DNA of 64,000 bases from Haliotis rubra (GCF_003918875.1 NW_025765237.1:806001-870000), one strand, 5' to 3'. Shown: positions 1,056-22,888, numbered from the stretch's first letter. The notes: generated from the sequence alone by a model not told the origin. Made by a program: numbers and translations.

Positions 1056-3952
1056 TTACGGTGGGCATCCTTCCCTTCCCTGCATGTCATACATGACGTA
1101 AGAGGACCCAGCAGTTGGAGGGAGAGCTGTGAGACTGACAGATGACTCCATGCCAGCACCACCAGCCAACTGAACCCTTGAGTCGATCACTGAGCTGTCG
1201 ATGGTGATGAGTCCCCCTCCCGACGTGCTGGACAGAGGCATTTCTGCTGTGCCTCCTAACTGTGTGAGTGTGTGGCTCTTACTGGGGTCAGGACCTGGAG
1301 GATGGATGCCACCAGACAAATGACACAAGGGTTCAGTCATTGGGCTCTGTGTGGACAGGTGGCCTAGAGGATCCACTACCACATGTTCCTCAGATGATCG
1401 GTTTATTGGAAGGATTGGCTCTTTGGCTGTTTGTGGCAGCTGCTGAGTCAGTATGTGTTTTTCACCTGACCGTGGCAGTGGATGACTGATAGTGTGTTCA
1501 CAATGGCCTAACACGTGTGTCACTCTTTCTTCAGCTGAGTGTATGAGATGTTCCTCGACTGGCATGTTGGAGGATCGACCAGCTTCCATCTCAGCTGCCA
1601 AGATGGTTCCTGTTCCTGTAGTGCTGACAGTCACATGCTTGGAAGCATTGTTACCTGTCGCGTCAAAACGCGATCCCTTCGAACACTGAGTGCGCCTTGT
1701 GTGCCTCTGCAGGTCATGTGATGTGTAGAAACGTTTGTAACAGATAGTACACTGGTGGGTTTTCATTTTAATGTCGTGGCGCTTGGAATGTTCTGCCAAG
1801 GCCTCAGATGTGGTGTAAGCCTTCCCACATGTTTCACATCCGAACGGTCGCTCCCCAGTGTGCAGCCCCATGTGCAGAACAAGGTCATTGCTGTTAGCAA
1901 AACCTTGCCCACAAATGTAGCAGTTCTCCTTCCTTGCCTTACAGTGCTTCTTCTGGTGAAGCTTCAGGTATGCAGGATCTGCAAAATGTTCTCCGCAGGT
2001 TCTGCACTGAATCAGCCCTTCACCTGTGTGGCTCTTCATGTGGATCTTCAGGTACCGCGGATCTCGGTAACTCTTTCCACAGATGCTACACTGGTGTCTC
2101 TCGTAGCCTGTGTGCATCTTCATGTGGCTCTTGAGGTATTTTGGAGCTGGACACTTCTTGCCACAGAATTCACACACCAAAGGGTTCTCCGTGTTGTGTA
2201 TCTGCATGTGTTTCTTCAGCGTCTTTTTGGCAGCAAACTCCTTCTGACAGACGTGACACTGAAACGGCTTCACTGAACTGTGCAGAAGCAGGTGATCCTT
2301 CAGGGTGGATGACGTGATGAACTTGTTGCCACACACTTCACAGGAGAATCTCTTCTCCCCTGTGTGCTTACTACGATGTACATCTAGAAGTTTCTGTGTG
2401 AAAAAAGCCTTGGAACAAAAACTGCACTTGAATTCTTTCTCCTTTGTATGTTGTCGCTTGTGTTTGTTGAGATGGGGACGGGAAGCGAAGTGAAGGTGAC
2501 AGTATGGACAGGCAAAGGGGCGTATTCCTTTGTGGATTCGAATATGCGTCTCCAAATTTGTTTTGGTCATAAAAGCTTTGTCACACATGCTACACATAAA
2601 TGACTTTTCTTTAGTCAGATGTCTCTTCTTGTGTGCACGGAGTCCACCTGTTGAGGTGAAGGTCATGCCACAAGTATCACACTGAAATGGACGTTCTCCC
2701 GTGTGGGTGCGGATGTGGTACTTGAGGGCAGGTGCCAGACTGAATGCCCTGTCACAGATATCACATTTGAATGCCTTCGCATGACGATATTTGTGGGTCT
2801 TCCAATTTGTTCTTGTCTTAAACCCCAGACCACACACATCACAGACAAAGGGCCTGGCGTCAGTGCGAGGCCTTATGCTGCCGCAGATTGGATGCATGTT
2901 TAAAAACTTTCTCACAGACCAGACACTTATACTGCTTTGCACAGGCACATCTCTTCTCACTGCCACATGTGTCACAAACCTTCTGACTCGTAACCTTCAG
3001 CTCATCCTCAGGGGACACAGCTTTATGCTTTGCTTTTCTTTCATTTTTGACACGACTTCTGGTCACAGGTTTTTTAACAATAATTCTTTTAGTTTTTGAT
3101 TTCTTATTTAATACTTGTGGATTGTCTGTATCAGACACAATGTCTGCCTGTTCCCAGGGTGGATCATTAGACTCAAGTGTCTCTCCTGAGAGTGATGTCC
3201 CTCTTTCCACATCCTCTAAAGCTTTTGTAGAACAACTTTCTGGCTCTTTCAGTGCTTTCAAAGCTAAGACATACTTCTCTCGTGGTCGACAAGATCGACG
3301 GGGGTCTCCCTGTATTGGTGTTGAACACCTCATTGTTCTTGACGCTGTCCATTGATAAATCAGATGTTTTTGTTTTCTTCTGCTGATCATCATCAGCTGC
3401 CTTATCACTTTCTTCATCCATGTGTGTGTCAAACTGTTCAAACGTTTCATCTATTTCATCATCACTACATTCCTCCTCCTCTTCCTCATCATCATCATCA
3501 TCACTCCCTGTCACAGACTCAGCAGGGTCAACGCTGGCTTGTTTTGGCTCAGCAGTGTTTTTCAGAACTGCACAATCAGATTCACTTTTATCTGGAAAGT
3601 CAGTAACCTCCACTCCAGTACCACAAGCACAGTTCTCATCCACTGATGTCAAATTGATACGGATCAGTGTCTCCTTTTTCTCCAGCCTCTCCCCACACCT
3701 GTCACAGCCGTCTGCTTCATTTGAGCAGACGGACTCTGCAACAACTTGAGTACATGTCACAACCCCCTGGACGAACTTGCTGAACATCTGCCCATCACCA
3801 TCATCCTCTCCCATTACAAGCTTCAGATTTAGGTCGAGAGTCCGATCCTGTACAACAGCGTGTGTGAAGGAGCACTGAAGGATGGTTGTAATCAGGCTCT
3901 GCTTCACACCCTCTCGCCTCGCTGGTTCCTTCATCTTCCCTGACTGACTCAT
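1056..3952 (-). CDS. ZNF-A: C2H2 poly-zinc-finger protein (~15 fingers) with the shared N-terminal domain and an acidic linker
   Basis: Joins ORFs 3173-3964, 2860-3450 and 1056-2975 through an extra base in the G5 run at 3300-3304 and a missing AC at ~2862 (KASH|TDARPF). TGERPF linkers; first ATG (MSQSGK) at 3952; acceptor ttcatttcttgcag at 4247-4260. Confidence 0.88.
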
Positions 3953-4304
3953 CTTCACCCACACAGCTCTCTAAGGACTGTCATCACAGCTGCCAGAAGG
4001 AAATATGGAGTCGTATAGCTTCACAAGGAAAGCTTGAGTCTAACAGATCCCCAATCACAGCTTCACAAGGGCAGCCTGGGCCACAAAGCCTCACAGTCAT
4101 AGATTCGAAAAGACATCTTCACAGATCAAGATGACAGCTTCATGGAGAGACCTTCATCCTGACACTATAAGGTGTTGCTGCCCCTGTGCTGTAGTGATCT
4201 TGTAGCCTGGATGGACTTCATGGGGCCCATTCCTTGGTCTTCTGTACTGCAAGAAATGAAAACGACAGTTTAGTGAAAGACTGAGTGATGCTCAAAGCCA
4301 AAGT

Positions 4305-4625
4305 TAGTGAGTGAGTGAGGGGGTGAGTTAAGATTTATAATCACATCGACAATACTTCAGCCATATTGTGACTAAAACAAGTTGTACACCCATAATATAT
4401 AAAGTTGTATTGTAAAATCTGTCAACTACAGACACTAAAACAACTAGATTACCACAAATACAGAAGAAAAGCTAGTTTGTAACATTAAAATTATACCATT
4501 ATTCAGGACAATACAAACTAAATACAGACATAGATCACCAGCAACTGAAGGTAGATCACCATACTCTAGACCATGGGGACATACAATACAGCTGCTACCT
4601 GCATCTACCCCAAGTGCTTGATATT
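4305..4625 (-). mobile_element. 5'-truncated retroelement 3' end with (ACTC)n tail, probably a LINE 3'UTR
   Basis: Homologous to 33110-33410 (ggtgatctaccttcagt...tctagttgtttta...ctgaa.tattg.cgatgtga.tataaat..taactcac); ends in the tail used by the local SINEs. Confidence 0.6.
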
Positions 4626-5269
4626 AGGAGAACCGATCTCAGCTTTCTTGTTACAAAGGCACACAATGAACCATATATATTTTGGACTACAACATACACT
4701 TATATGGTTAGCAGCAAAATATGTACATTGTATCTTGTATATATGTGTGTGCATGTATATGTGTAAGTACATATGTTTGCATATATATGCATATATGCGT
4801 ATTTATATGAATTCACACTAGTGTGGCAAACTATAACTGAGTGGGGAATAAAGATATATAGAAGAAGAAAAACAGAGTCTGATCACACAATCCATTCAGA
4901 TGCCTTCAACATGATAGCATGGGATCTTATTGACCTGAGTGCCGTTGTACAAAACAACCTCTGCGCTAAGGCTATCATAAGTCTATGTTAAGATATGGGA
5001 GTTACTGTCACCTTAGCACAAAGATCGCTTTGTGCCATCCTAGTCTACCCCAAATTCCTACAAGGGTGCCCCTTTCCAGTGTCACCTGCTGTGATATGGC
5101 TGGAATATTGATAAAACCTTACTTATTCACTCACTCACCCCTACAATCGCATGAAGGGAGATTCAGCTTATAGTATTGTTTGTTTTCTTTAAAACTCCAC
5201 TCTTTACACAAGGATACACACTTCAAGTTGACATATTAAACAAACCTATGCAACTGCTTTATGCCTCAA

Positions 5270-8200
5270 CTAGGTGGGAGACCGCCCCTGAAGATTCAGC
5301 TTGTAGTATGCATTAGTGAGCATCTGGTCCGTGTCACCCATCAGGGCGTTCAGGGCATTCTCCAAACTGGAGTTGGGGTCGAGGGAGTCGATGTGGATGG
5401 GAGAGGAGATGCTGGCCATGTCCAGCAGCATGTCTTCTGCCTCCCCTTTCACCTGTTCTGTATCACTGGTGTCACTCTCACTCTTGTGTCCTTCATTCAT
5501 GTGACCTTCACTGGCCTGTGCACTGAGCTGAGTTTCATTGGCTTGTACACCGACCTGATCATTGTATCCCTGTGCAATGACCTGACCATCCTTGGCTTGC
5601 ACATTGACCTGAACTTCATTGGCTTGTACACTGACCTGATTGTTGAGCTCCTGTTCACTGTCCTGACCTGTGCGTACCTTGGCAATGACCTGCCCTTCAT
5701 TGCCTCGTACATTGACCTGACATTCATTGGCTTGTACATTGACCTGACATTCATTGGCTTGTACATTGACCTGATCCATGTGTCCCTGTGCATTGACCTG
5801 ATCCTCATGTCCCTGGGCAGTACACTGACTTCCACTGTCTTGCACACAGATCAGATTATTGTCTCCAGGTACATTGACATGAGCTTTGCTGGCCTTTGTG
5901 TAGACCAGACTATCACTGGCCTGTACATTCATGCCATCTCCTTGAGCCATGAAATGTTTATCAGCACTTGCTTCACCTTGGAGAATATTGCTGGACTCCT
6001 GAAGTGGATTATTTCCCCTGACTGCCCCTTAACACCACCCTTGTCACTGGCCTTCACACTGACAAAAGTGTTCCTGCTGAACTTTCCAGTGATCCTTTCA
6101 AGGTCACAGTCCTCAATGACCTGGGTTTCAGGATTCTCTTCCTGTTCTTCTGTTGGTAGTGAAATATTTTGAATGTCCACTGAAAGATTCTGATGTCTGG
6201 GTACTTTTGGGGTTACTGGTCCTGCCTCACTCAATTCTTGTGCTTTCACTTGAAGCATGTTGGCATCACTATTTTCAAGGTCATACTTGAATTTATCTGG
6301 TAACTGAACTCTACTCTTGACCTTATTGTGTGTTTTCATATGTTTCCGCAAATCACTTGCACATACATAACCCTTGGAGCAAATATCACATTTATGTGTT
6401 TTCAAGCTGTCGTCATGTCGACGGGCATGTTCAGACAAAGCATCAGCCTTCATGAAGCCTTTGCCACACACCTGGCACTCATGTGGACGTTCTCCAGAAT
6501 GAACTCCACGATGAAACCTCAGATCCCTCTGGTTGACAAACTCCCTGCCACACTCCTCACACTGCACAGTCTTCCTCCGGCAGAACCTCTTCTTGTGGAC
6601 CTTCAGGTAAGATGGGTCGGCAAAGTTCTCAGAGCAGAGATCACACTTCAAGAGCCCCTCGCCGGTGTGAGATTTCATGTGGATCTTCAGATAGGCAGCT
6701 TCTCGGTAGGACTTTCCACACACTTCGCACCGATGCTTCTCATACCCGATGTGAGTCTTCCTGTGGGACTGGAGGTAGTTGTTGGTCGGGAAGGTCTTGC
6801 CACAGACCTCACACACAAGAGGGTTCACTGTGTTGTGGATCCTTGAGTGTTTCTGAAGTTGCCCAAAGGAAGCAAAGTCTTTCTTGCAGCATTCACACTT
6901 GAATGGTTTCACATCACAGTGCAGTAGGACATGCTTCTTCAGAGATGCCTTGACAGTGAATGAGCTTCCACATTCATCACATTTGAACTTCTTATCCCCT
7001 GTATGCTTGGTACGGTGGTACTCTAGATCTTTGGCTGATATGAAAGCTTTAGGACACAGGTCACATGTGTGCCGTTTCCCACCTAAGTGGAGCTTCATGT
7101 GCTTGTGGAGGTGGAGCTTTGACAGGAATGGCTTGCCACACAAACCACAAGTGAAAGGTCGATTTCCTGTGTGGACAGTCAGATGAGCCTGCAGCTGTGT
7201 CCTCATGAGGAAGCACCTGCCACACAGGTCACACTTGAATGTGTCAGCCTTGTGCTGTATGTTGTGAGTGGCAGCCATGTTGGTCTTCCCAGCAGCGTCA
7301 CTTCCCTGCACTCCATCACTGTTCCTCATATGAAGTTCTACAGCATGGGAATCATCAAAAGAAGGCTGCTCACAGCTCTCACATTTCATACCATCATGCA
7401 CAGATTTCATATGTCTTGTCAACTGCAGTTTTGTCTTAAATACAATATCACACACACTACAAGAGAAGTTGTCTGATTTAATATTAGAGTTCATATTTTC
7501 AGGATTCTCTGTCCCTTTCCTTCCATGTGTTGGTGGCAAACTTCTGGGGTATTTTGATCTGCTTAAAGATTGGTCCGTCAAGGAGCATAATGCAGTCATA
7601 TCAGAGTCATCAGTCTTTCTTGTCTGTCTCTTTCTTCCACCGCGCCTGAGACAACCACTCACACTAGTATGTTTATCTTGTATTAAATTGGTCAGGGTTT
7701 CAGCGGACTCTGAAGCACTATTTTGATTTCCTGTATCTGAACATTGACACTTGCTACCTGATCCAGTAGATGAAAACTTCTTCCTGTCTCCATCAGCAGT
7801 CTTATTCACAGGTGCTTGCTTCATGCAAGTATAGCCCTGCAGTTGATCAGCATCTCTAGGGTCATCATTCACCACCTCACCACAGACTGTACAAGAGGGT
7901 TTACCAGTCTGAATGTCTCCAGTGAGTTCAACCTTGTCACCAGAGACTGCACAAGAGTGTCTATGTTCATCAGCTTTGGTGTCTCCAGTGTCTACAACCT
8001 TATCAACAGAGACTGCACATGATCGACCATGTTTATCAGCCTGAGTGTCTCCAGTGTCTACAGCCTTGTCACCCAAGACTGTACAAGAGTGTCCATGTTC
8101 ATCAGCCTGAGCTGTCTCCAGTATCTACAGCCTTGTCACCCAAGACTGTACAAGAGTGTCCATGTTCATCAGCCTGAGCGTCTCCAGTATCTACAGCCTT

Positions 8201-8938
8201 GTCACCCAAGACTGTACAAGAGTGTCCATGTTTATCAGCCTGAGTGTCTCCAGTATCTACAGCCTTGTCACCCAAGACTGTACAAGAGTGTCCATGTTCA
8301 TCAGCCTGAGTGTATCTTGTGTCTACAGCCTTGTCACCCAAGACTGTACAAGAGTGTCTATGTCTATCAGCCTGAGTGTCTCCAGTATCTACAGCTTTGT
8401 CACCCAAGACTGTACATGATCGTCTATGTTCATCAGCCTGAGTGTCTCCTGTGTCTACACCCTTGTCACCCAAGACTGTACAAGAGTGTCTATGTCTATC
8501 AGCCTGAGTGTCTCCAGTATCTACAGCTTTGTCACCCAAGACTGTACATGATCGTCTATGTTCATCAGCCTGAGTGTCTCCAGTATCTACAGCCTTGTCA
8601 CCCAAGACTGTACAAGAGCACCTGTTAACAGATGTCACCACAATGTGAAAGGCGGTCTGTCGACCCTTCTGGCCACATTCTGGACAGTCATCAACCACCT
8701 CAGACCTTGAGTCAGACAGGCAGGTCACTGTGCCATTTACAAATTCTTCATAAAGCGGATTCTCACAACCTTCAGATTCAAACATCAGTCTCATTTCTAA
8801 AACTCCGAGCAAAAAACTAATGTTGGAAACAGAGCACTGAAGACTTGATTTGTTAATGTCCTTAACGACTCCAACACCTCTCTTCATGTGTGATCTGGAT
8901 GCCTGTGCCATCTTCTCTTTCTTTGACCATGCCACCAT
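5270..8938 (-). CDS. ZNF-B: C2H2 poly-zinc-finger protein (~12 fingers) with the shared N-terminal domain and 22-aa and 9-aa repeats
   Basis: Joins ORFs 8102-8938, 5929-8076 and 5270-5950 through an extra C at ~8112 in a repeat unit and a probable missing base near the C4 run at 6015-6018; acceptor tttcctattctttcag at 9135-9150. Confidence 0.88.
5500..5830 (-). repeat. Coding 27-bp minisatellite (QVNVQANEC-type 9-aa units, ~12 diverged copies)
   Basis: Visible in the 226-aa ORF: QVNAQGHMD QVNVQANEC QVNVQANEC QVNVRGNEG ... Confidence 0.85.
7880..8618 (-). repeat. Coding 66-bp minisatellite (SCTVLGDKAVDTGDTQADEHGH, ~11 copies)
   Basis: cccaagactg recurs with period 66 (e.g. 8271, 8337). Confidence 0.95.
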
Positions 8939-9707
8939 GAACTCAAAGGCCTAAGTGTTCCTGTTCAGTTCCAGAGGTTCCACAGAATTGACTGGGAATT
9001 CTTTATTCCAGCTTGATGAGCAATAACAAATGACAGTCACTCACTTTGATTTTCTCAATACCACCTGAAGATCACTGACCAATTTCCTCTCAGTGCTGGT
9101 ACCCATCAAGTGGTGATATCCATACCAGTATGCACTGAAAGAATAGGAAACGGCCTTGAAAGTGTTGCTCCAAACAATACTCATATGACTGTTAAATATA
9201 TTTAAACTTTTAATGGGTGGCCCTTACTAATGTCTGCACAGGAGTATTGAGTCAAGCCTATTACCATCATTAACAAGTCTTCAAATGATGATAAACAAAC
9301 AAAATATCTATCGTTTGATCTTTAAATATTTATTTTTTTGTTTCATAGTGTATCATTTCCAAAAGGCATGTTTTGAGGTGGTTTTCTGTTTTTTTTCTCC
9401 TTTGAATTGTGGGGCAAAGGGAGGATTGGGTGTGGGTGTGAGGGTGAAAGGTGAAACCTCACAAGATACCCATTATAAGAACCTCATATGGTATTCAAAC
9501 ACCATGAAATTTATTATCACATCCCTTCAAAGGAGGAGACAATATTGTTATTTGATCTAGAAATTTACATGATAATGATCAAAATGTAGCTTTAAGTCAG
9601 TGTTATATTCACTGAGATCAGGTAGACACTGGCCATGTGACTTACATCTATTAATTTCAATTAGAACAGTGCTAAAGGTTTTTTTTAAGATTAATGTATC
9701 ACTTTAA

Positions 9708-9940
9708 CCGGGGTTAGAATTAGTTTTCAGCAACACATCCTTGTCAAAAGAGGCGACTAACGGGATCGGGTGGTCAGGCTCGCTGACTTGGTTGACACAT
9801 GTCATCGTATCCCAATTGCGAGGATCGATGCTGATGCTGTTTATATCTAGATTATCTGCTCCAGACTCGATTATTTACAGACCACCACCATATTGCTGGA
9901 ATATTGCTGAGTGCGGCATTAAACAACAAAACCAACCAAC
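9708..9940 (+). mobile_element. SINE family B copy, slightly 5'-truncated
   Basis: gggttagaat...aagaggcgactaacgggatcgggtggtcaggctcgctgac...gctggaatattgctgagtgcggc. Confidence 0.85.
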
Positions 9941-10450
9941 CAAATGTGATAAAACAATCAAGCACTCAGAAAACATAAAACAGTCTTCTCACATGGGAAC
10001 ATCAAGTAGTATGAACCTGATCTAGTCTTCACCTACTGGTTCATTTTGTGTGCGATTCAACAAATAACATTCACATTTGTAACTTTTTCACACATTAGAT
10101 TTATACATGGCTTAGTGGTTATGTTGAAAACTGAACCAATATAGTCAACATGTAGGTAATGACATCATCACAAACCACACCTTATGCAATACGACTTTAT
10201 TATGTTACTTGCATATAATAAGTGAAGCATTACATTATCACCTATTGTGCTTGATACGAGTTTTATCAACTCTGTAATGTTGACCCACATGAATAACACA
10301 CAATTCACGTAGACAAACTCAAGAAGGCCAAAACAATACCTACATTGATCTGGGTGTACACCATTGTTCACACTGCCAACATACACAGCTTAACGTTTCA
10401 TGGAGATAATCGGACATGTAATTCTTGACACACTTGACATATGTGAATCA

Positions 10451-10580
10451 GAGTGAGTGAGTGAGTTAAGTCTTACACCACTTGTACAATTTTCCAACAA
10501 TATCTCGGCAGGGGACACCAGAAATAAGCTTACCACATTGTACCCATGTGGGGAATCGAACCCATGTCTTCAAGCGTGAA
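10451..10580 (-). mobile_element. SINE family A (tRNA-derived), partial
   Basis: B box ggttcgattcccc plus family A body and (ACTC)n tail on the minus strand. Confidence 0.8.
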
Positions 10581-10776
10581 TGTTAATCAGAACTGTATAC
10601 CATAGAAAAACATCCTCATCAAAAGTTAAGTGGTATATAATGGATGAGATTTGCTAACAGGAACAGTGAAGCAAAGTCAGATGTTGATGTTTAGAAATAC
10701 AACTGAATCCAACAATATGAAAACAAGGAAGCTACAGTGGTGACTTTTCCCAAAGTATTTAATACTTCTTATTACA

Positions 10777-11022
10777 GACCCGTGAAGATTCGGGTTAGAA
10801 TATTGGCCTTCACTAACCCATGCTTGTCGTAAGAGGTGACTAACAGGATTGGGTGGTCAGGCTTGCTGACTTGGTTGAAATATGTCATCAGTTCCCAATT
10901 GCGCAGATCGTTGCTCGTGCTGTTGATCACTGGATTGTCTGGTCCAGAGTGGATTATTTACAGACTGCCACCATATAGCTGGAATATTGCTGAGTGCGGC
11001 GTAAAACTCAACTCACTCACTC
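10777..11022 (+). mobile_element. SINE family B, full length (non-tRNA structured head)
   Basis: Flanked by 13-bp TSD acttcttattaca (10764-10776 / 11023-11035); starts gacccgtgaag, ends aactcactcactc. Confidence 0.92.
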
Positions 11023-11328
11023 ACTTCTTATTACAACAGTATAGGGCATAAAACTGATTGGATAACAAGAATCATCATGTCTGAACATAAATTCCTACGC
11101 ATACCACTTCAAAGTGGTCTGGAATCTTACCCTGATATAACTTGCTTTCTAGATCACTTTCAGCAACCAAATTACAAATAAATTAATATTTCACAGAAAG
11201 CGAGTAAGTATTTGAAAACTCATTTTCAACATAAGTCCTATTACAGGGCTTGTGGAATTGTGGCTTGTGTGATGACAATGACACTCAACTCCACAAGTAT
11301 TCGGTGGTAACTCCACAAGTGTTACAAT

Positions 11329-14300
11329 AGACCGATCCAGTCTGTCAATCAAAACTGGCGCATGCGTCAATTTTGGCCAATCAGCAGGCCGGGCGCGCTG
11401 TGTGGATTTGTCAGACTTATTTCCAGGGTCAAACGATGCATCCGAAGCGATGTGCTTCGAATTATGCCATTTACACTCGCTATATTTATTACATATTGCT
11501 GCGATTTGATGTGTACCTTAACAAAACCATTATGGCCAAGACAACAAAAATGGAGGCGGATCAAGAAACGCAATAGGCCTAACGATCAGTTAAATGTCTG
11601 CACCATCGTTCAGGAAACCTACGTCTGCCTGCTGATGAGAATTTGCACGAATTTCCACACTTTTGCACATGTGCAAAATCATTACCAATTGATGACAACA
11701 AATAGCAGTTTAAGACTTTGCAAGTGTTATAAACACAGACAATTCTTGTAACTACAAAATTGTTTTGCTTAACGTTTTTAGTCACTACTAGGCATTGAGT
11801 TGGTAATGCCATAAAGCTCAAATGAGACAGGCGAGAAAGCCGTGACACGATGTAAACAAATCTTCATTTCGGTTAGGGTCAACTGAAATAGCAAAACTTG
11901 TTACATGAAAGAACAATGAGGCAGATATTGTCCCCTTCGCTCTTAGATAGTCTTCAATTTGTCACACATTGTAGGATGTTTTAAGTTTCATAAGCACAAT
12001 CTGAAGGCCTACAGTATCTTGTTAACAGAGCAAAATATTGAGGAGTAATATTTTTTATTCAAAGCGGAAATATTGTCAGTGTCAGCAGTTGCCTATCATG
12101 CACTATCCAAGTATCAAAATTAGTTCATATGAGTGCCTATAAAACCATGCTTTAAATATTTCAGATTTTTATAAAGAGTTGCATGGGACTTTGAACTGAA
12201 TTACCTTCCTCCATGTTGATCGAATACTGAAAACTATGTGAGAAGAATAGTGACTTTCTGGAGTATTGGAATGAGTGAAATAAAGTGTATATCTTAATTA
12301 CGAGAACATTATTTGAAGTTTTGTTACCACATAAATTATTCACATATAATGGTACATTTTAGGAGTAATATTACAACTGTAATTTTGATTAATTCACTGG
12401 AAATGATAGCAAGGTATGTTTTAAGAATCTTGCTGTTTTTAGTAAACGTGGAAGGGTAATAAAATTAATAATAATCTAATCAATAATAAATAATTATTCA
12501 ATTGATTGACATATCAGATTTTTTAGATTTTAAGGCAGAACTAGGCAAACAAACACCATACATATCATGGCAGGACAATCACTAGGTATTAACTTTCTTG
12601 GCTCCTGCTTTTAGATGTTTTTTTAAATAATACATTTACTAATAAGATAATTCTGAAAGTGATTGCTAGTATCATAACTCATTAAAGTTATTTCAACATC
12701 CAGAAAATTTGAAAAAGCAAAGGCTACGTTTTGGTCAAACCCTGGTCAGGCATTATCCAGTCCTGGAACAGAATAACTTACAAAAATCTCAGGTGACTTT
12801 TCATGTAACGGAATAAAGATTGAAACATATATTTAACCCATATTTGATGTAATTCTTCTGATAAATCATAAGTTTTTTAGGAGGTTACTAATATTTGAAG
12901 ACTGAGCCAAAGCTAGTGTTTATTAAGATGGTGGATTTGGACAAATTGTTCAAGGTTTGTTGATGGTTATTTGCAAAATGAGCTTCATATTAAATTGCAC
13001 ACTGGTTTGTAGGAGGTGAACGCTTCAGGGCATTTTCATGTCTGTTTTCCTAAAACTTTGTTATGACTTTTACCAAATTTTGAATCAACTTTATTATAAT
13101 TGTTATGACACCAGTAAGTATATAGGAAATAGATCAAAATCAGTGTTATGTCCTCTAGGGATATGGTCTCAGATCTAATAAAACAAAGATTATCATTGTT
13201 TAATTAAGAAGCAATAATGTCAATATGTAATTGTATTGACAGAAGGCTTTGAACATAGGATATATTCTTTGCACCTTATTTACACTAGTAGTTAGCAGTT
13301 AAACATCTCTGATGAAAAAACAATAGATCTACATTTGTATTTTGTGTAACATTCTATTTCAATGCTAGTTAATTGTTCGGATAACTGTGGATTCTCTGTT
13401 CCAAAATTTTGCATCACATGTTTCCTATTTCTGGAAGATGGGTCAGCTAGTGTACAGGTGCAGACAGTATCTTGGATCTTCTTTGTGTTCTGGTGCTGTG
13501 ACATACCTGTACATAAACGCTGGCAGTTCATGAAGTCCAGTATTGTGGAAGTTTGTATGTAAATTAGGATTCCACAACAAAGTACATATAGAAAAATTAA
13601 ATTGAAATGATGATTAAAAAAATGATTTCCTTATATTCAGTGTCATTTTATCATGGTGTACAGATTTTGAAGAGAGAAACTTTACTGAGAGTTGCTGCAG
13701 ATCAGCTGTTGAATATTTGCTTCTGGGTATGTCCAGATCGTCCATGGAAACATATTGTTTACAAGCCCAATTACCGTTTCCAGATTTCCAAATAAGATCA
13801 AATAGATTATGCTGTGATTGATTTGTTTACATTAATTGTACAGACAAATAAGGTGCATGAAGTAGTAGACGGAAATATTTTCTGCTTTTTATTTACCATT
13901 CTCTTAATTCATTAAAAGATAGAAACCCATGTTTTCAGATTATTGAACTAAATTTGAACAACGCCAACGGATAAGTAAAGCGCCACGCAGCGCAGTGTTG
14001 ATAATCTTTTTTATAGATACGAAGCGATCTGCAACATGAACATGTGGTTGTGTTCCACGAGTTTTAAAATTATAAACCCAAACAACAAAATTCAGTTATC
14101 CTTCCCCTGCTAATATCTGTGGACGGTGGTGAATAATTGCCAGATAGATTAATTGATTCGAAGAAATTACGCTTCCTACAGTCTCAGCAGCTAGTCGAGA
14201 TGCTTTTTCATCGGGCATGTAACTCATTTTCACTCGCCAGTTGTAATCTGCCATCTAAAATATATTAAAAATCACATACGTATAACTTGCCTCTTTAAAT

Positions 14301-14469
14301 AACATTCACAAACGACGGATACCAAAGTATCACAAGCAGAATTCACCAACAACGTTCGCAATCACGTAACGTTTCGCCGGCGGTGACGCCATTGTGATTT
14401 GCCAGTGGTTGTCCCCCTAACGTCAAAAACGAAGTGGGCGGGGCTTATCGGCCGGGACTGGATCGGTCT
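11329..14469. mobile_element. ~3.1-kb decayed DNA transposon with AGACC...GGTCT termini (ISL2EU/PIF-Harbinger-like)
   Basis: Inverted repeat caatagaccgatccagtc (11325-11342) / gactggatcggtctattg (14456-14473), AT on both flanks; CpG-rich ends, no intact ORF. Confidence 0.7.
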
Positions 14470-14708
14470 ATTGGACAAGGAGTTGGAATGTGAGATTCAC
14501 TGAGACAACGCTGCTACTACTGACAATGGTATTCAACCGAAACAGTTAGTGTGACTGTATATGAATAAGTGAATCCTTTATGTATGAATCACAAAGATAA
14601 TGCCATTCATTTGTATATAAACATAAAAAAATAGGGAAAAAACCCCACACTCAGAGTTCTGTGAACATGATAAACATACCACAAGTGTCACCAACACTCT
14701 ACAAGTAT

Positions 14709-17700
14709 TCAGGAATTGTCCTGCATCTCACACATGGCATAATGTTGTCCGTCATACACAATCTGACCCTGGTCATTCACCATCATGGCGGAGTGGTCCC
14801 CCCTTGACAGCATCATGTCTGCCTGGTGTATACTGGACAGGCTGCTGGAGTACAGACCACCGTCATGGCCGCCTACAGAGGACGTCATGCTGGGATCCAC
14901 CGGCTTCAGGTGGGAGGGAGGTTCGTTGTAGTCCCCATCTGTTCTGAAGGTGGTTGCAGTTGACTGAAGGTTTGTTTGAACATGAGAGAACTGACCAGTA
15001 TTGTGATCTGAGGGTACATGTGACATGTATCCTGTATGAGCTGAGGGTGCATGTGATATATATCCCGTATCATGAGCTGAGGGTGCATGCAATAAATGTC
15101 CTGTATCATGAGCTGAGGGTGCATGTGATATATGCCCTGTATCATGAGCTGAGGGTGCATGTGATATATGCCCTGTATCATGAGCTGTGGGTGCATGTGA
15201 TAAATGCCCTGTATCATGAGCTGTGGGTGCATGTGATAAATGCCCTGTATCATGAGCTGAGGGTGCATGTGATAAATGCCCTGTATCATGAGCTGCATGG
15301 TGCATGTGATAAATGCCCTGTATCATGAGCTGAGGGTGCATGTGATAAATGCCCTGTATCATGAGCTGTGGGTGCATGTGATAAATGCCCTGTATCATGA
15401 GCTGAGGGTGCATGTGATAAATGCCCTGTATCATGAGCTGCGGGTGCATGTGATAAATGCCCTGTATCATGAGCTGAGGGTGCATGTGATAAATGCCCTG
15501 TATCATGAGCTGAGGGTGCATGTGATAAATGCCCTGTATCATGAGCTGAGGGTGCATGTGATATATGCCCTGTATCATGAGCTGAGGGTGCATGTGATAT
15601 ATGTCCTGTATCTTGAACAGATGGTGCATGTGATATATGCCCTGTATTATAGTCAGTGGTCTCAGTAAAGGCGGAAGGTCTCCCATCAGCTATAGTGCTC
15701 TGTGCCATGGGTCTTGCATCACCAGATAACTGCTGCTCTGCTGTTGTGCTCGGCTCCAAGTCACTGTCACATGGCTCCCAATCTGGCTCTGTCTGTGGCA
15801 TGTCAATATCTCTGTTGCCTGGTTTCAGATTATCAGGAAGTGTTGCTCGAAGCTTGACTTTTCCATGTCGGACTTCATGTTTCCGCAATTCGTTTGTATT
15901 AATGAAGGGTTTGCTGCACACTTTGCATCGGACACAGTTCTCCAGAGTGTGCCGTTTCACATGTTCTGATAAAGCTTCAGGCTTAGCAAAACCCTTGCCA
16001 CAGGTTTCACAGCCAAACGGTCTTTCACCTGTATGAATGCCCATGTGGCTTGTGAGGTCACGGTTGGTGGGGAATCCCCGGCCACACACACTGCAGTACT
16101 CCAGCCTCCCCTTACAGTACTTCCGCTGATGCAGCTTGAAGTAGGAGGGATCGATGAACCAGTCACCGCACGAGTGACACTGGATCAGGTTCTCCCCTGT
16201 GTGGGTCTTCCTGTGGATCTGCAGGTACCATGCACTGCGGTAACTCTTCCCACACTGGTCGCACTTGTGCTGCTTGTAACCCTTGTGGGTGATGTCATGG
16301 GAACGGAGATTGCTTGCTGTGAGAAACCGTTTGCCGCACAACTCACAGATAAACTTCTTGTCATCACTGTGTATCTTCATGTGACAGCGGTACTGCAGTT
16401 CCGTCACACACTCTTTGTCACAAACATCACACTTGAACGGCTTCAACTCACTGTGGAGAAGTATATGCTTCTTCAGGGAGCTCCCCATTGTGAACGTCTT
16501 GTCACACATAGTACAGCTAAAGGGTTTGTCACCTGTGTGGACACGGCGATGAACACTCAAATCTCTTAAATCAAAGAACGCCTTCGGACAGGAGTCACAT
16601 TTATGTGACCGAACCCCTGTATGGAGCCTTGCATGTCTCTTTAAGTGAGAATTGGTCAAACAACCTTTCCCACATACAGTACAGGTGAAAGGTCGGTGCC
16701 CTGTGTGAATGCCCTGATGGCTTCTCAAGGACATCTTGGATGAGAATGTCTTGTCACATGAATCACACTTAAACTTCTGCTTACTGTGGCACTTCCTGTG
16801 ATTGCGCAGGGCTGAGGAATCTGTGTACGTCTTCCCACAAGTGTCACACTGATAGGGTCGCTCACCAGTATGGACACGAGTGTGAACCCTCAGAGAGGAT
16901 GCATCCGAAAAAGATTTTCCACATGTGTCACATTTGAACTCCTTGGAAGCCTTATGAGTTTTCATGTGTCTTGTTAAATGTTGCACACTCTGAAAGGAAG
17001 AACCACAGACAGAACACACAGAGGTAAGTTCTGAAGAATGAGTTTTTTCATGTTTTTTCAGCATTTCCAAAGATTTGAAGCGTTTGTCACATAGATCACA
17101 TCTGGCATATTTACATCCACTATGACACTTCTCACCCTTTCCAGTCAGTTTTGACTTATCTTTGCCACATGTTTTACATTTATAAGATTTTCCTCCCAAG
17201 GACTTGGCCTTTCCTTTCCTCTCCCCTACAGTGTTTACCCTCCTCCTCCCACCCCCATGACGTCCCATGCTGGCACCAGCAGCTCCTCCAACCCCTTCTC
17301 GGTCTTCAACATCATCAACAACATCACCATCACCACTGGCTACATAATCCAACATGCTTTCACTGTCTGACATACTCTCAAAATCTTTATATATCATTTT
17401 AGTCCTAGATCTCCTTGGCCTTTCAGATAAACTAGTTCTTACAGTTATAAGGTCATTTTCAGTTGCTTCATGTCCAGGAGTAAATGCTTCTTCAGGAAAG
17501 ATGTCTTTGGGAGGTGCATGACCTTCACCTTTGCCCTTCAACTGCGTGTCCATAGGAATGACCATCTCAGACTTGTCACAGCTCTCGAGGTCGGCACATG
17601 ATCTACTGGTCAAGTTTCCATGGTCATGACAGATGTTACATTCAGACTTAAAATCAGAAGCAATCAGCGTGAAACTAATTACAGTGTCTTGCTTCTGCAT

Positions 17701-17988
17701 CTGTTCTCCACAATCACAATTCTCATACACCTCGACTGGCAGAATCTTTGTAGAGACATCACTGCACTTGACTTCTCCATGAATGAATGCACTGAAGATG
17801 TGTCTGTTGGAGTCAGTCACTCCGGGCTCGACCTTCAAGCTGACCTCTAATGCAGCATCCGACACAGTGGCCTGGACAAACGAACACTGCAGAAGAGCCA
17901 AACATGTTTCTTCTTGACTTGTCACAGGCTTGTCCTTCACCTTGGTTCTATCCTTTGGCTGGCCTCGTTTTCGTCGACTCTTGGGCAT
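14709..17988 (-). CDS. ZNF-C: C2H2 poly-zinc-finger protein (15 fingers) with the shared N-terminal domain and a His-rich repeat tail
   Basis: 900-aa ORF 15286-17988 continues into 14709-15686 through one extra base in a repeat unit at ~15297; acceptor catcttcatccttttgcag at 18673-18691. Confidence 0.92.
15020..15650 (-). repeat. Coding 36-bp minisatellite (HAPSAHDTGHLS, ~17 copies)
   Basis: tgcatgtgataaatgccctgtatcatgagctgaggg repeated in tandem. Confidence 0.95.
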
Positions 17989-18983
17989 GATGAAAGGAGA
18001 GCTGACACAACAACTGGACCACTAGTCTGTCAGCAGTTTTCTCCCAAAGCATTGCAACATCGAAAATGATTTGTTTGATCCTGGCATCTACTCTTGTAAT
18101 AATGTTAATGTGGCATCAGTAAATAATCTCCCCTGTGCAAAATCAGCTCTACCAGAAGATTGTAACATCTGTAACATCATGATCATCAGTTTTTGTCTTG
18201 TGTCTTATTGATGCCAATCACAAATGATGTTTTCCCCTGACACTTTTCATTTTTAGCAATACAGTGAAGATTCCAACGCTGACAAACAAGCATCATGGAC
18301 TGTACAAGTAACCTCAAAAACTTGCACAGAAATGTTTTCATTATATCCGTGAATCAATCTGTTTGTGGATCATGATAACAGTTATCATGAATCCACAGGA
18401 GAAGGTGAGCATATCGATTCAACAAACAACCAGTCTTGAGACCTTACTAAACTGAGAATCTATCACAAATAAGCAGTTCTTCTTTCAATATGTTTCAATA
18501 GAACAATATTGAATATATTCTGTGGTTGCAAAACAAATCCTTGCCAATGCCGACATCTCCATCACACACAGTCCTGATGTACATGCAAGGGTTCTTCTGT
18601 ACACTGACTAAAGACACATAGTCTTCCCCAGCCATGTTCAGTTACCTCCCTTTGCCAGGCTTGTGGTGAAACCTGCAAAAGGATGAAGATGCTGAACATG
18701 CTGAAGGTAAGACAGTGTCCGAAAATAAGCATGAAAGTCAAGAAGCCCCTTGCTGAATGTTAGTTGCCTTAGGGGGGGGTCAATTTTGTCAGATCTAATC
18801 TCAAGAACTCCCATGACAATGATCAGGGGCTTGAAAAAATAGTTCTACTAAAAGTTCTAAATTTAAACATATGTAGGGACTAGCCTTTTATTATGAGGAG
18901 GGGAAGAAGAAGAGGAAGGGGAGGAGGTGGGGGAGAAAATGTTACATAAATGGGCGATGGGTATCAAATTTGATATTAGTCCT

Positions 18984-19350
18984 GCTGAAGGGGTCGTCGG
19001 CACGGGTACTACAGATATGTACCTTGGCCATAATGAGAATACAGAAACGTACCCTAGGACGATTCCATTCCCATTGTGTCGTATTCTTGACTGGAACTGT
19101 AATACTGTTGTATTAGATACATTTGATTGTGTTATGTAAGTAATGAGAATACACAGTAACGGATATTTCGCGATGCACTTGAATACCACTCGGAATCAGT
19201 TGAACGGGAACAACTACATATATACGGTTTCGGTTTTTGATTGCGGAATATGGACTCGTCCGCCTTTAAGGGTACCGGGTACGTTTCTGTATTTTGACTT
19301 TGTTTAGGGTACATATCTGTAGTACCTGTGCCGACAACGACCCCTTCAGC
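18984..19350. mobile_element. Mutator-like MITE
   Basis: ~70-bp imperfect TIRs (gctgaaggggtcgt...acgaccccttcagc) and 9-bp TSD attagtcct (18975-18983 / 19351-19359). Confidence 0.88.
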
Positions 19351-19712
19351 ATTAGTCCTGAGACCAACCAGGAGGTACGAGCTCGACGAACGGAAGGGGC
19401 ACGTGAGATCAGTGGGGTGAGACCCACGGTGGGCAGTAGGAGATCATTAGCTCTGTAAACTGCATTCTGGATTCTGGCCTATTAAGTACAATGGCATTCA
19501 ACATCAGTGTTTTGTTTCTGATCCTAGATTCACTGCAGCAACTATGATCGACTCGTCAGTGTGGTTTTGTCTGTGTAGACTATTCTCGTCCGCTATTGCC
19601 TCTGCAATAAACAGTAAAATAATAAAAACAGGAAAGTATTCAATTACCCGCATTGATGATTGTGTTCCTCTTTCCTTGGCGCATAATAAAGAATTCGTTA
19701 GAAATTAAACAA

Positions 19713-19800
19713 ACATACATTTCTTGGAGTTTGTTGGCAATGGCTGCTATTAATTCAAGGGAGATAATACTTGAAAGCTGAATTTGATACCGCTATGGAA
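19713..19800 (-). promoter_or_regulatory. Candidate first non-coding exon and promoter of the minus-strand ZNF array
   Basis: Donor-like AAAT|GTATGT at 19713-19718, motif AAGGGAGATAA at 19757-19767, locally CpG-retaining sequence. Confidence 0.4.
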
Positions 19801-21329
19801 ATGTTTATTCGATCGCCTACACTTTCGATGATTTTTATATCTTTTCGAGGTTTGAGATCTTCATTCCTCCTGTGCAGTGTCCGAAAAAGCCACTGGTCCG
19901 CTAGCCCGTGGCTAATAAATATCTAGTCGGGCCAGTAAATCTCCAGTCACTGGCTCGACTGGCTAGTGAATTTTCATGGGGTGATTTTATAAATACACCG
20001 CTCTCTCCGACTAGTTAAGTTATAATACACTTTTAAATCATGCAATTTTGTACACACGTACTAGGGGGGTCAGCAATTTTGTACAATAACATATGTTTAA
20101 AATTATACTTAGAAATTATGGGAAGGGGTCACTGATTTTGTACATGACATGAGGCAAAACTTGGAAACTATTTCGCACACTGCACCTGTACAAGGATGAA
20201 TCAATTCGATGAGTATATCCTGGGATAATCTACAACAGTCTCCCTGGTATATCTTATGAGTATTCACGTCAGACAAAGTTTTGACAACACAACATAGATT
20301 TGCTTTCAATCGAGCATCACTATTTAAATGATTTTGGGATGTGTGGATGTATTATACAAATTCAATGTGCTGTAATGCCAGGAAAGGTAAGACACTTTGT
20401 GGATGACAACTTCTTATTATATTATGATGTGGCGTCTCGATATAGATTCCGTTGTGTAATAAGGAATGATGTACTGCAGCAAAGAACATTGAGTGAGTGA
20501 GTTTAGCTTTTGCGTATTAATGTGATTACGCTTTGTCGTCGAGTTCACGTTCATGTTCTTTTCTGGAGCATCTCTCCATTCCGTCATGTATAGACCTGTT
20601 CGCCACCATAGCTTGCATTTGGTCCCTATTCGAATCTCACGACTCTACAAAAATCCTCCCATAAAGTATACGTTATTGGTGTTTGTTTACAGTTTGAAAC
20701 TGCATATTATTTGGCACTCTTCCAAAATGATGTGTTTACCATCCTCACCGGATAAAAATAGTTCTGCCTACTGTCGTTTTTAATCGCTGAGGTGAGAAGT
20801 GAAGTGAGGTGACACGGGGATAATATTGTACGTGTGTGTGCGTGTGCGTGTGCGCGTGTGCTATGAGATAATGGTATTTTGGTCGTTTTGACGGTAATCA
20901 CCCTAAAGTTGACCAGTTAGGTCCAGTGAGCTGTGGAGATCTATCCGAAGGGGTGTTGAACACGCGTTTGTTCTCCTTTGGTTTGTAGTGGAACTGTCAT
21001 CTTGGCCATGAAGGGGAAAACGACTGAAAGAATTACGCTGCAGTGCATATGGTGCATTTCAGTCTGAGCTGAGCTGAGAGCTCTTTCCAACCCCAAGAGA
21101 CGCCGGGATCCAAGGACTGCAGGCCCCGGCCGGGTCCAGGTTGGATCCTCATGTGGGTTCCGCTTCCTGAAGCCAACGCATAATTACTCATTGTCTTCTC
21201 CGAAAAGTCATTGGAAACGATGCATTCATTCCTACTGGTGTGATTTTTCATATGAACCAAGTAGGGCATGATATTTAACTGTTTTGTCATGGAAGCGTGA
21301 CACGAGTGATGAAAGCTGGAATCTCAAGC

Positions 21330-21442
21330 CAGGGCCTAGATTTTCGAAGCTCTCTTAGCGCTACGACAGTCGTAAGTGCCATACATTAACATTGACTTAT
21401 GACTATCTTAGCGCTAAGAGAGCTTCGAAAATCTAGGCCCTG
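21330..21442. mobile_element. Palindromic MITE, Harbinger-like
   Basis: cagggcctagattttcgaagctctcttagcgct...agcgctaagagagcttcgaaaatctaggccctg is a near-perfect hairpin; relatives at 36094, 32284, 49303 and ~4945. Confidence 0.85.
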
Positions 21443-22549: not shown

Positions 22550-22888
22550 GTAAGTCATGAATAGGATGACGATGTGGATATGATATATTGTTTGATGAAA
22601 ATAAGAAAATTACATGGTTGCAAAACAAGCTTTTTGGGTTCACATTACTGTCTATTTTGCTCACATTCCTTCAAAGTTTTAATTGTTCAATAATACTTTA
22701 GTGGTTTTTGCATCATCAGATCTCTCTATATGTGTTTACCAACAGTTTTTGCAAGGTCTCTATTAAAACAATTCCAAATCATTCATTTTGTACCCATCTC
22801 TTGAGACCTACAGTGTGTAACCAGGTAAAGTCAGGCAGTAGGGGATCAAGTTCCAGGGTTGTAGATTGAGACTTGTCTTAGACCTATT

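What the first reader, a model, noticed from the sequence alone, without database searches (positions are those of the whole stretch)
1056..19800. Three tandem ZNF ORFs look like promoterless alternative last exons fed by one upstream promoter
Seen: each minus-strand ORF lies in one exon that begins at a clean acceptor (4247, 9135, 18673). The ~1 kb between the ZNF-B stop (5270) and the ZNF-A acceptor is almost all a retroelement 3' end, a TA/TG-rich tract, a MITE relic and a SINE tail, with no CpG-rich patch or convincing donor. Unique DNA between ZNF-C and ZNF-B is also CpG-poor. Promoter-like, CpG-retaining DNA with a donor first appears at ~19.7 kb. Established: invertebrate gene bodies are methylated and CpG-depleted while promoters are not; Drosophila lola, broad and mod(mdg4) use alternative zinc-finger terminal exons. 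Inference: one non-coding leader splices to one of at least three whole-protein cassettes, so new paralogues arise by duplicating a single exon under a shared promoter, head-to-head with ZNF-D.
Basis: inference. Interest (0 to 1): 0.78.

Follow-up and report, generated by a model that had tools for sequence, protein, structure and literature searches.

The report
Abalone tandem zinc-finger gene trio
Three complete zinc-finger genes lie head-to-tail in the blacklip abalone genome inside one unbroken CpG-poor (methylation-type) domain, with a single conserved promoter-like region upstream; this fits the idea that one promoter feeds all three but does not prove it, because no RNA junction evidence could be obtained.

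Summary
The window is Haliotis rubra. A (1056-3952), B (5270-8911) and C (14709-17988) are collinear C2H2 zinc-finger paralogues on the minus strand. D lies head-to-head with C, and a fifth copy lies outside the window.

In the assembly each ORF is broken by one or two frameshifts. All five breaks are private to this Nanopore assembly. H. asinina has three intact ORFs, and independent reads contradict two of the three breaks that could be tested. The three genes are therefore real single-coding-exon genes.

The acceptor-like motifs at 4247, 9135 and 18673 exist and are conserved. However, 18673 sits in the 5' arm of a hairpin that is identical in the two species (candidate miRNA or regulatory stem).

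The CpG observation holds in both species. There is one depleted domain from about 0.75 to 19 kb, with spacers as depleted as the ORFs. It is bounded upstream by conserved, CpG-retaining DNA with a conserved donor at 19719. A young transposon in the C-B spacer shows excess CpG decay.

No splice junction was seen, because the public runs gave no usable RNA over the sites. RefSeq models that chain the ORFs look computational.

Verdict: the shared-promoter idea is plausible (about 45% in a broad form, 15-20% as written) but unproven.

The parts
1056..3952 (-). ZNF-A: a complete ORF of about 965 aa once two assembly frameshifts are removed. It has a family N-terminal domain, 13-14 C2H2 fingers and a unique tail.
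   Evidence: P0226 (RefSeq H. rubra, 259 aa) equals 3952-3176. The H. asinina orthologue is intact at 957 aa. The frame breaks at 3300-3304 and about 2865 are private to this assembly.
4240..4270 (-). Acceptor-like motif upstream of A: a pyrimidine tract followed by CAG, with the exon starting at 4246.
   Evidence: Pyrimidine fraction 0.76, in the top 12 of 1395 AG sites. 29 of 31 bases are identical in H. asinina, against 77-79% in the flanks. No strong hairpin. Use as a splice site was not observed.
5270..8911 (-). ZNF-B: a complete ORF of about 1213 aa once two assembly frameshifts are removed. It contains a 22-aa tandem repeat array and C-terminal 9-aa repeats.
   Evidence: Three DNA runs insert one base at 6014, which restores the frame. 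The H. asinina orthologue is intact at 1058 aa with its ATG at the equivalent of 8911.
9033..9207 (-). Conserved block upstream of B. It holds the acceptor-like motif (exon start 9134), a moderate hairpin and a donor-like AAA|GTGAGT at 9046.
   Evidence: 103 of 111 bases are identical at 9185-9075. The longest identical run of the whole B region (61 nt) lies here. Hairpin z is -2.0 in H. rubra and -1.1 in H. asinina. Its pyrimidine tract is tied for best among the 1395 AG sites (only 3 reach it).
9508..9607 (-). Conserved non-coding block 0.4 kb upstream of the B acceptor motif. It is a candidate private promoter or first exon of B, or a regulatory element.
   Evidence: 88-92% identity in 50-nt windows, against about 70-75% background. 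Its function is inferred only.
10158..10283 (-). Conserved block with an AATAAA at 10201 followed by a GT-rich tract. It is the likely poly(A) site of ZNF-C.
   Evidence: 88-94% identity. The hexamer and its flanks are identical in H. asinina. The assignment is an inference.
11326..14473 (.). Young 3.15-kb transposable element inserted in the C-B spacer. It is the source of the local CpG-rich patch.
   Evidence: At least 40 genomic copies at 93-98% identity. Absent from H. asinina. This copy lost 7 of 72 consensus CpGs, against 40 of 1341 in 18 other copies.
14709..17988 (-). ZNF-C: a complete ORF of about 1092 aa once one assembly frameshift in the 12-aa repeat array is removed.
   Evidence: The H. 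asinina orthologue is one intact ORF of 1091 aa. The only non-triplet indel is at 15298.
18560..18775 (-). Ultraconserved non-coding block.
   Evidence: 206 of 216 bases are identical, and 93 of 93 in the hairpin. The 133-nt identical run is the longest in the 4.3-kb C region. MFE -43.9 kcal/mol, z -5.0, 0 of 200 shuffles as stable. Weak mir-788-like Rfam match of 29.6 bits, E 7.7e-5, below the gathering score. Single copy in the genome.
18976..19361 (.). Young MITE with terminal inverted repeats. It explains part of the CpG-rich signal upstream of C.
   Evidence: Thousands of candidate copies, about 95% identical. Inverted repeats at 18983-19054 and 19277-19351. Absent in H. asinina.
19376..19853 (-). 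Conserved, CpG-retaining promoter and leader region of the C side. The putative leader exon ends at 19720, with donor GTATGT at 19719. A second conserved donor-like GGTAAY lies at about 19647.
   Evidence: 82% identity with a sharp loss upstream of about 19850. 19800-19782 is identical and the donor is conserved. CpG o/e is 0.74 for 19362-20400, against 0.18 for 17989-18975. The TSS was not observed.
23568..26476 (+). ZNF-D: a fourth collinear paralogue, head-to-head with C. In this assembly it is broken by two GGG-to-GGGG frameshifts.
   Evidence: P0227 (RefSeq H. rubra, 277 aa) equals 23568-24398.

Best explanation
The locus is an old tandem array, conserved across Haliotis, of three intact C2H2 zinc-finger genes in the order C, B, A. 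Each gene has its whole protein in one coding exon. The frameshifts in this assembly are sequencing errors.

The array behaves as one germline transcription and methylation domain. The domain begins just downstream of the conserved, CpG-retaining promoter and leader region at 19.4-19.85 kb, which is shared head-to-head with ZNF-D. It ends about 0.3 kb after the A stop codon.

Most likely, transcripts started there run on through the spacers. B and A would then be expressed at least partly from such upstream-initiated RNA, by splicing of an upstream exon onto the conserved acceptor motifs at 9134 and 4246. In that case the three ORFs are alternative products of one conjoined unit.

Shown: intact conserved ORFs, conserved motifs, the continuous CpG-depleted domain, and methylation-type decay in the spacer.

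Inferred: the transcription start, read-through past C, and every splice junction.
For: - The ORFs are intact and collinear in H. asinina, and all frame-breaking indels are private to the H. rubra assembly. Reads contradict the assembly at two of these sites.
- CpG o/e is 0.41 for ORF A, 0.20 for B and 0.32 for C. It is 0.20 for the B-A spacer, 0.36 for the C-B spacer without the TE, and 0.08 for 8912-9690.
- For comparison, CpG o/e is 0.74 for 19362-23567 and 0.86 for 1-750.
- The same single depleted domain is seen in H. asinina, with 0.12-0.41 in the spacers.
- Local control: the solitary ZNF at 38.6-40.6 kb has flanks at 0.93-0.95.
- The young TE copy in the spacer shows 12-fold CpG decay relative to other substitutions. 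This is the highest of 19 copies (Fisher p 0.008, age-normalised p 0.0016).
- The acceptor motifs are top 1% for pyrimidine tract and are conserved.
- The B-A spacer holds no conserved block other than the one next to the acceptor motif.
- The leader region and its donor are conserved.
Against: - No RNA junction, TSS or poly(A) evidence was obtained. The only possible RNA run (X1) covers parts of A only, with no joint at 4246.
- C seems to have its own conserved poly(A) signal at 10201. The TE-decay result may therefore only show that the C 3' UTR is methylated.
- Conserved blocks at 9508-9607 and 9033-9207 could be a private B promoter or first exon.
- CpG depletion is only a proxy for methylation, and promoters that are silent in the germline need not retain CpG.
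- Tandem ZNF genes usually have separate promoters.
Confidence: 0.45

Rival explanations
1. Three ordinary, independently transcribed tandem paralogues. Each has its own CpG-poor promoter and a short private non-coding first exon spliced onto 18672 or 18021, 9134 and 4246. The continuous CpG depletion then comes from closely packed methylated genes, methylated repeats and read-through.
For: - This is the usual architecture of ZNF clusters (own knowledge).
- The upstream regions share no DNA homology, so each copy has had time to evolve its own control DNA.
- Conserved non-coding blocks lie upstream of B at 9508-9607. There is a donor-like GTAAGT at about 9646, conserved as GTAACA in H. asinina.
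- A conserved AATAAA at 10201 suggests that C ends before B.
- X1 contigs cover A but not the unique parts of B, suggesting unequal expression.
Against: - There is no CpG-retaining patch upstream of B or A in two species, whereas a solitary ZNF in the same window has CpG-normal flanks.
- The B-A spacer of about 1 kb consists of repeats and lineage-specific insertions, with no conserved promoter-like block.
Confidence: 0.25
2. Two units. C is a separate gene, running from the promoter at 19.8 kb to the poly(A) site near 10.18 kb. B and A share a promoter and first exon in 9.2-10.15 kb, and A is reached by skipping the B exon.
For: - There is a conserved poly(A)-type block at 10158-10283 and conserved blocks just downstream of it.
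- The B-A spacer lacks any promoter-like conserved DNA, but A keeps a conserved acceptor motif.
- The conserved donor-like AAA|GTGAGT at 9046 could serve both B and A.
Against: - CpG o/e in 8912-9690 is 0.08, the lowest in the region, so there is no unmethylated promoter signature.
- No RNA evidence.
Confidence: 0.15
3. C, B and A are exons of one giant in-frame protein, as in the RefSeq model of H. asinina (2903 aa).
For: - XP_067664182.1 chains C, B and A in frame.
- A 2493-aa model in H. cracherodii also ends with the A tail.
- The B-to-A junction would stay in frame in H. rubra.
Against: - The chain enters B 39 codons after its ATG, cutting the conserved N-terminal domain.
- It uses a very weak GC donor (GCATAC) and pyrimidine-poor acceptors.
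- Each ORF keeps its own conserved ATG and stop codon in both species.
- The H. rubra RefSeq model at this locus threads through exons antisense to ZNF-D, which shows that chaining artefacts occur here.
- An X1 contig runs unspliced across the proposed acceptor at 3971/3970.
Confidence: 0.05

Closest known systems
Drosophila lola, mod(mdg4) and broad (alternative zinc-finger terminal exons; own knowledge)
   Same: There are several alternative 3' cassettes, each encoding a different zinc-finger array, arranged in tandem downstream of one promoter region. New isoforms arise by exon duplication.
   Different: Those loci share coding 5' exons (a BTB domain) that are joined in frame to each cassette. 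Here each cassette has its own ATG and its own N-terminal domain, and no BTB or other shared coding exon was found. Any shared part would be non-coding. No junctions were seen.
Cholinergic gene locus (VAChT/ChAT; unc-17/cha-1): a shared non-coding first exon spliced to alternative whole ORFs (own knowledge)
   Different: In that locus the two ORFs are unrelated genes of one pathway and one is nested in an intron of the other. Here the ORFs would be three paralogues in series. The shared leader is not demonstrated here.
Conjoined or read-through gene pairs in mammalian ZNF clusters, such as the ZNF559-ZNF177 type (own knowledge)
   Same: These are neighbouring same-strand ZNF genes joined by read-through transcription and splicing of upstream 5' exons onto the downstream gene's acceptor.
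   Different: In mammals each partner also has its own CpG-island promoter. Here B and A show no promoter signature in two species. The RefSeq chained models here look computational.
Ordinary tandem C2H2-ZNF clusters (KRAB-ZNF, ZAD-ZNF)
   Same: Lineage-specific tandem duplicates, with one large coding exon holding the finger array and rapid evolution of the non-finger parts.
   Different: The family-specific N-terminal domain was found only in abalone among 1.84 billion representative proteins. The spacers behave like gene body for CpG.
Animal microRNA precursors, or regulatory hairpins in a host gene's 5' region
   Same: A hairpin of about 90 nt with strongly negative z. It is perfectly conserved between species while its flanks diverge, and it lies on the sense strand upstream of a coding exon.
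   Different: It reaches no Rfam gathering score (29.6 versus 90 bits). No small-RNA reads were available. The loop and 3' flank are as conserved as the arms. The sequence also carries consensus 3' and 5' splice-site motifs.

Membership tests
C2H2 zinc-finger proteins (Pfam PF00096 / PF13465) | Tandem C2H2 fingers with TGEKP-type linkers | tested here: met
   Pfam E-values of 1e-43 to 1e-63 for A, B and C. By pattern count the largest frame pieces hold 13 (A), 11 (B), 14 (C) and 12 (D) fingers. The finger arrays of A-D align collinearly.
lola / mod(mdg4) / broad-type loci | Common coding 5' exons (BTB domain) shared by all isoforms | tested here: not met
   No BTB or any non-finger Pfam domain was found. 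Each ORF starts with its own conserved ATG and a paralogous N-terminal domain.
lola / mod(mdg4) / broad-type loci | Alternative terminal cassettes joined to one upstream donor, as shown by junction reads | not testable with these tools
   The look-up of sequencing runs found no run on record as RNA. The one read-laying run showed no joints at 4246 or 9134.
Shared non-coding leader loci (cholinergic-locus type) | One promoter and first exon, with no private promoter for the downstream ORFs | tested here: inconclusive
   Only proxies were available. There is a single CpG-retaining conserved region at 19.4-19.85 kb and depleted spacers in two species. However, conserved blocks upstream of B could be a private promoter.
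Shared non-coding leader loci (cholinergic-locus type) | A functional 3' splice site upstream of each complete ORF | tested here: inconclusive
   The motifs are top 1% for pyrimidine tract and are conserved. The C motif is buried in a conserved hairpin. Usage was not observed.
Pseudogenes or decayed duplicates | Frame-breaking mutations that are real and not selected against | tested here: not met
   The five breaks are absent in H. asinina and all other indels are in frame. Reads contradict the assembly at 6014 and, in one run, at 3301. The assembly is Nanopore-based.
microRNA precursor | A stable hairpin of about 60-100 nt, conserved between species | tested here: met
   MFE -43.9, z -5.0. 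93 of 93 bases are identical in H. asinina.
microRNA precursor | Membership of a described family, or mature small-RNA reads from one arm | tested here: not met
   The best Rfam match, mir-788, scores 29.6 bits against a gathering score of 90. A full-text search for arm sequences found nothing. Small-RNA reads were not available.

The most novel reading that the evidence does not exclude
One non-coding leader from the promoter at 19.8 kb is joined to one of three complete zinc-finger ORF cassettes. The choice is gated by conserved RNA hairpins that enclose the 3' splice-site motifs of C (perfectly conserved) and B (weaker). On this reading, RNA structure selects which whole protein a single abalone transcription unit makes. 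Alternatively, the C hairpin is cut out as a miRNA, which would couple miRNA release to cassette choice.
Probability: 0.08. Interest if true: 0.8.

Novelty: new variant of a known kind. Interest (0 to 1): 0.45.

Why it matters
If one promoter really feeds three whole-protein cassettes, this would be a route to new transcription-factor paralogues that needs only duplication of a single exon. It would be distinct from the lola type, which shares a coding N-terminus. It would also be conserved for the tens of millions of years that separate H. rubra and H. asinina.

There are practical lessons as well.
- Frameshifts in this Nanopore assembly should not be read as pseudogenes.
- RefSeq chained models at this locus (2903, 2493 and 1982 aa) should not be trusted as proteins.
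- The CpG landscape, together with CpG decay in dated transposon copies, can be used to map germline-methylated transcription domains in molluscs that lack methylomes.

The perfectly conserved hairpin upstream of ZNF-C is a concrete candidate for a new mollusc miRNA or splice-regulating element.

Tried and rejected
1. RNA evidence. The look-up of sequencing runs listed no run on record as RNA. The single read-laying run on 3200-9199 showed that X5, X6 and X8 are whole-genome DNA. X1, only a guess at RNA, covers A at 3200-3793 and 3922-3986. There were no joints or loose ends at 4246 or 9134.
2. Exact look-ups of the window's ORFs and of the H. rubra RefSeq model found nothing.
3. Word-index protein searches with whole C and with its N-terminus were swamped by generic ZNFs or came back blank. 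The annotated relatives are chained models outside the length window. The finger-region search and the profile search then found them.
4. Poly(A) hexamer counts after each stop are no different from chance and are not conserved after A. I dropped this as evidence.
5. CpG decay in seven old SINE copies, comparing depleted with normal domains, gave 16 of 42 against 12 of 56. This is a trend only, and the copies differ in age.
6. An RNAalifold alignment of the three paralogous acceptor blocks gave no coherent common structure (-6.5 kcal/mol). Homology of the hairpins among paralogues is therefore not shown.
7. No comparable hairpin or conserved block lies upstream of the fifth paralogue in H. cracherodii or H. 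asinina, or upstream of D.
8. A full-text search for the hairpin arm sequences gave no paper.
9. The CpG-rich patch at 13.5-14.7 kb looked at first like a hidden B promoter. I rejected this because it is a young multi-copy TE that is absent in H. asinina.
10. I considered and rejected the RefSeq chained models as evidence for real C-B-A splicing.


Full report
**Organism and material.** The window is G000:C347:806001-870000 of a 1.378-Gb genome in 2855 contigs.
- Two RefSeq proteins of Haliotis rubra are encoded exactly in it. P0226 (259 aa) equals 3952-3176. P0227 (277 aa) equals 23568-24398.
- The size matches the published blacklip abalone assembly. That assembly was built from about 30x Nanopore reads, with two Racon rounds and one Pilon round (PMC6774278).

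**The ORFs.** Stop-to-stop translation shows three minus-strand C2H2 zinc-finger genes: A at 1056-3952, B at 5270-8911 and C at 14709-17988. A fourth gene, D, lies on the plus strand at 23568-26476.
- The four genes align finger by finger at 38-41% identity. They share a family-specific N-terminal domain.
- In 1.84 billion representative proteins this domain was found only in abalone models.
- A fifth paralogue (P0183, P0184, P0186) lies beyond the left edge of the window.

**Frame breaks.** None of the ORFs is continuous in the assembly. A has breaks at the C5 run 3300-3304 and at about 2865. B has breaks at about 8110 and at the G4 run 6015-6018. C has a break at about 15298. D has two GGG-to-GGGG sites. 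Three lines of evidence say these are assembly errors.
- The H. asinina locus (L005) has intact ORFs of 1091 aa (C), 1058 aa (B) and 957 aa (A). In the pairwise alignment every other ORF indel is a multiple of three, and only the five break sites are not.
- DNA contigs from two studies and two organisms insert the missing base at 6014. One run removes a base at 3301.
- Other agents of this scan reached the same view elsewhere in this genome.

**The acceptor motifs.**
- The motifs at 4247, 9135 and 18673 rank among the 12 best pyrimidine-tract AG sites of 1395 on this strand of 20.5 kb.
- The H. rubra and H. asinina loci are collinear over 1025-22568, non-coding DNA included.
- The A motif is 29 of 31 identical, against 77-79% around it.
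- The B motif sits in a block that is 103 of 111 identical. This block holds the longest identical run of the whole B region.
- The C motif sits in an ultraconserved block at 18560-18775, which is 206 of 216 identical. Its 133-nt identical run is the longest in the 4.3-kb C region, ORF included.
- That C block folds into a 93-nt hairpin at 18621-18713, with MFE -43.9 kcal/mol, z -5.0 and none of 200 shuffles as stable.
- The hairpin is single-copy in the genome. It gives a sub-threshold mir-788-like Rfam match.
- The AG at 18673 lies in its 5' arm next to the loop. A GGTAAC donor-like motif lies in the 3' arm.
- The B block also folds, but weakly. The A block does not fold.

The 'clean acceptor' of C is thus at least as likely to be part of a miRNA or regulatory stem as a plain splice site.

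**CpG landscape.**

| Segment | CpG o/e |
|---|---|
| ORF A | 0.41 |
| ORF B | 0.20 |
| ORF C | 0.32 |
| B-A spacer | 0.20 |
| C-B spacer without the young TE | 0.36 |
| 8912-9690 | 0.08 |
| 17989-18975 | 0.18 |
| 19362-23567 | 0.74 |
| 1-750 | 0.86 |

- The CpG-rich patch at 13.5-14.5 kb belongs to a young 3.15-kb transposon (11326-14473, at least 40 copies at 93-98%). The patch at 19.0-19.4 kb belongs to a MITE. Both elements are absent from H. asinina.
- H. asinina lacks these insertions and shows the same picture more cleanly. CpG o/e is 0.7-0.98 upstream of C. One depleted domain (0.12-0.55) then runs through C, both spacers, B and A, and values rise after A.
- A control in the same window is the solitary ZNF at 38.6-40.6 kb. 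Its ORF is at 0.49 but its flanks are at 0.93-0.95.
- The young TE copy in the spacer has lost 7 of 72 consensus CpGs to TG or CA, with only 0.81% other substitutions. Eighteen other copies lost 40 of 1341. This copy ranks first of 19 (Fisher p 0.008, age-normalised Poisson p 0.0016).
- The spacer has therefore been methylated in the germline since the insertion.

**Promoter and leader region.**
- 19376-19853 is 82% identical between the species. Similarity is lost sharply upstream of about 19850, and 19800-19782 is identical.
- The GTATGT donor at 19719 is conserved. A second conserved donor-like site lies near 19647.

**What speaks against a single leader for all three.**
- A conserved block at 10158-10283 carries an identical AATAAA (10201) followed by a GT-rich tract. 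This is probably the poly(A) site of C. The transposon would then lie in the C 3' UTR, and its CpG decay would prove only that C transcription reaches it.
- Conserved blocks at 9508-9607 and around 9135, together with donor-like sites at about 9646 and 9046, could form a private 5' end of B.
- The upstream regions of A, B and C share no detectable DNA homology.

**Annotation evidence.**
- RefSeq chains the ORFs. H. asinina XP_067664182.1 (2903 aa) joins C, B and A in frame. An H. cracherodii model of 2493 aa ends with the A tail.
- These junctions cut 39 codons into the conserved N-terminal domain of B. They use a GCATAC donor and pyrimidine-poor acceptors.
- Each ORF keeps its own ATG and stop codon.
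- The H. rubra model XP_046558324.1 (1982 aa) reaches C through three exons antisense to ZNF-D.
- I treat all of these models as computational chains and therefore as neutral evidence.

**RNA evidence.**
- No run is on record as RNA.
They are about 3-6% diverged from the window.
- X1, only guessed to be RNA, covers 3200-3793 and 3922-3986 of A and almost nothing unique in B. It has no joints at 4246, 9134 or 3971.
- The decisive observation could not be made.

**Conclusion.**
- The inference is plausible but unproven.
- My estimates are:

| Reading | Probability |
|---|---|
| One transcription domain from the 19.8-kb promoter that supplies B and/or A | about 45% |
| Exact model (one leader spliced to 18672, 9134 and 4246) | 15-20% (a subset of the row above) |
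| C separate, with B and A sharing a start | about 15% |
| Fully independent genes | about 25% |
| In-frame giant protein | about 5% |

- The comparison with lola, broad and mod(mdg4) fails on the shared coding N-terminus. The cholinergic locus and mammalian conjoined ZNF pairs are closer analogues (own knowledge).

Noticed in passing
window 18560-18775 (hairpin 18621-18713), minus strand: An ultraconserved non-coding block holds a 93-nt hairpin that is 100% identical between H. rubra and H. asinina. The hairpin has z -5.0, is single-copy and gives a weak mir-788-like Rfam match. It is a candidate new mollusc miRNA or a hairpin that regulates splice sites, 0.65 kb upstream of the ZNF-C start codon.
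   Followed up: partly
window 3986/3987, with its source at 6262-6443: Contigs of X1, X5 and X6 (two studies) carry an insertion of about 184 bp, 35 nt upstream of the A start codon. It is a sense copy of ZNF-B finger DNA (6262-6443) plus TA. It is absent from the window, from X8 and from H. asinina, so it is a polymorphic intra-cluster duplication.
   Followed up: partly
window 11326-14473: A young 3.15-kb transposable element with at least 40 near-identical copies (93-98%). It is absent from the orthologous H. asinina site and carries only short ORFs. It appears to have been recently active in H. rubra.
   Followed up: partly
window 14712-40570 (exons 40570-38603, 36500-36372, 35365-34844, 26481-26422, 26192-25986, 24696-24580, 18021-15316, 14942-14712): RefSeq H. 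rubra XP_046558324.1 (1982 aa) fuses an upstream ZNF (38.6-40.6 kb) to ZNF-C through three small exons that are antisense to ZNF-D. This is very likely an annotation artefact. The A and D N-termini are annotated as separate proteins of 259 and 277 aa because of assembly frameshifts.
   Followed up: yes
window 7905-8618, 15036-15647, 5502-5819: There are coding tandem repeats: 66 bp x 10.8 (22 aa) in B, 36 bp x 17 (12 aa) in C, and 27 bp units in the B tail. Their lengths differ between species. H. asinina B lacks about 480 nt of the array, and two of the five frame breaks lie in these arrays.
   Followed up: partly
window 10158-10283: A conserved block with an identical AATAAA (10201) plus a GT-rich tract and two conserved CpGs. 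It is the probable poly(A) site of ZNF-C, which would give a 3' UTR of about 1.4 kb before the transposon insertion.
   Followed up: partly
window 24385 and 25590 (ZNF-D): Both frame breaks of ZNF-D are GGG-to-GGGG homopolymer extensions inside conserved finger motifs. This is typical of Nanopore consensus errors.
   Followed up: partly
window 38603-40768: A further minus-strand ZNF gene (16 fingers in its largest open frame by pattern count) forms a small CpG-depleted island between CpG-normal flanks. It served as an internal control for the CpG argument.
   Followed up: partly
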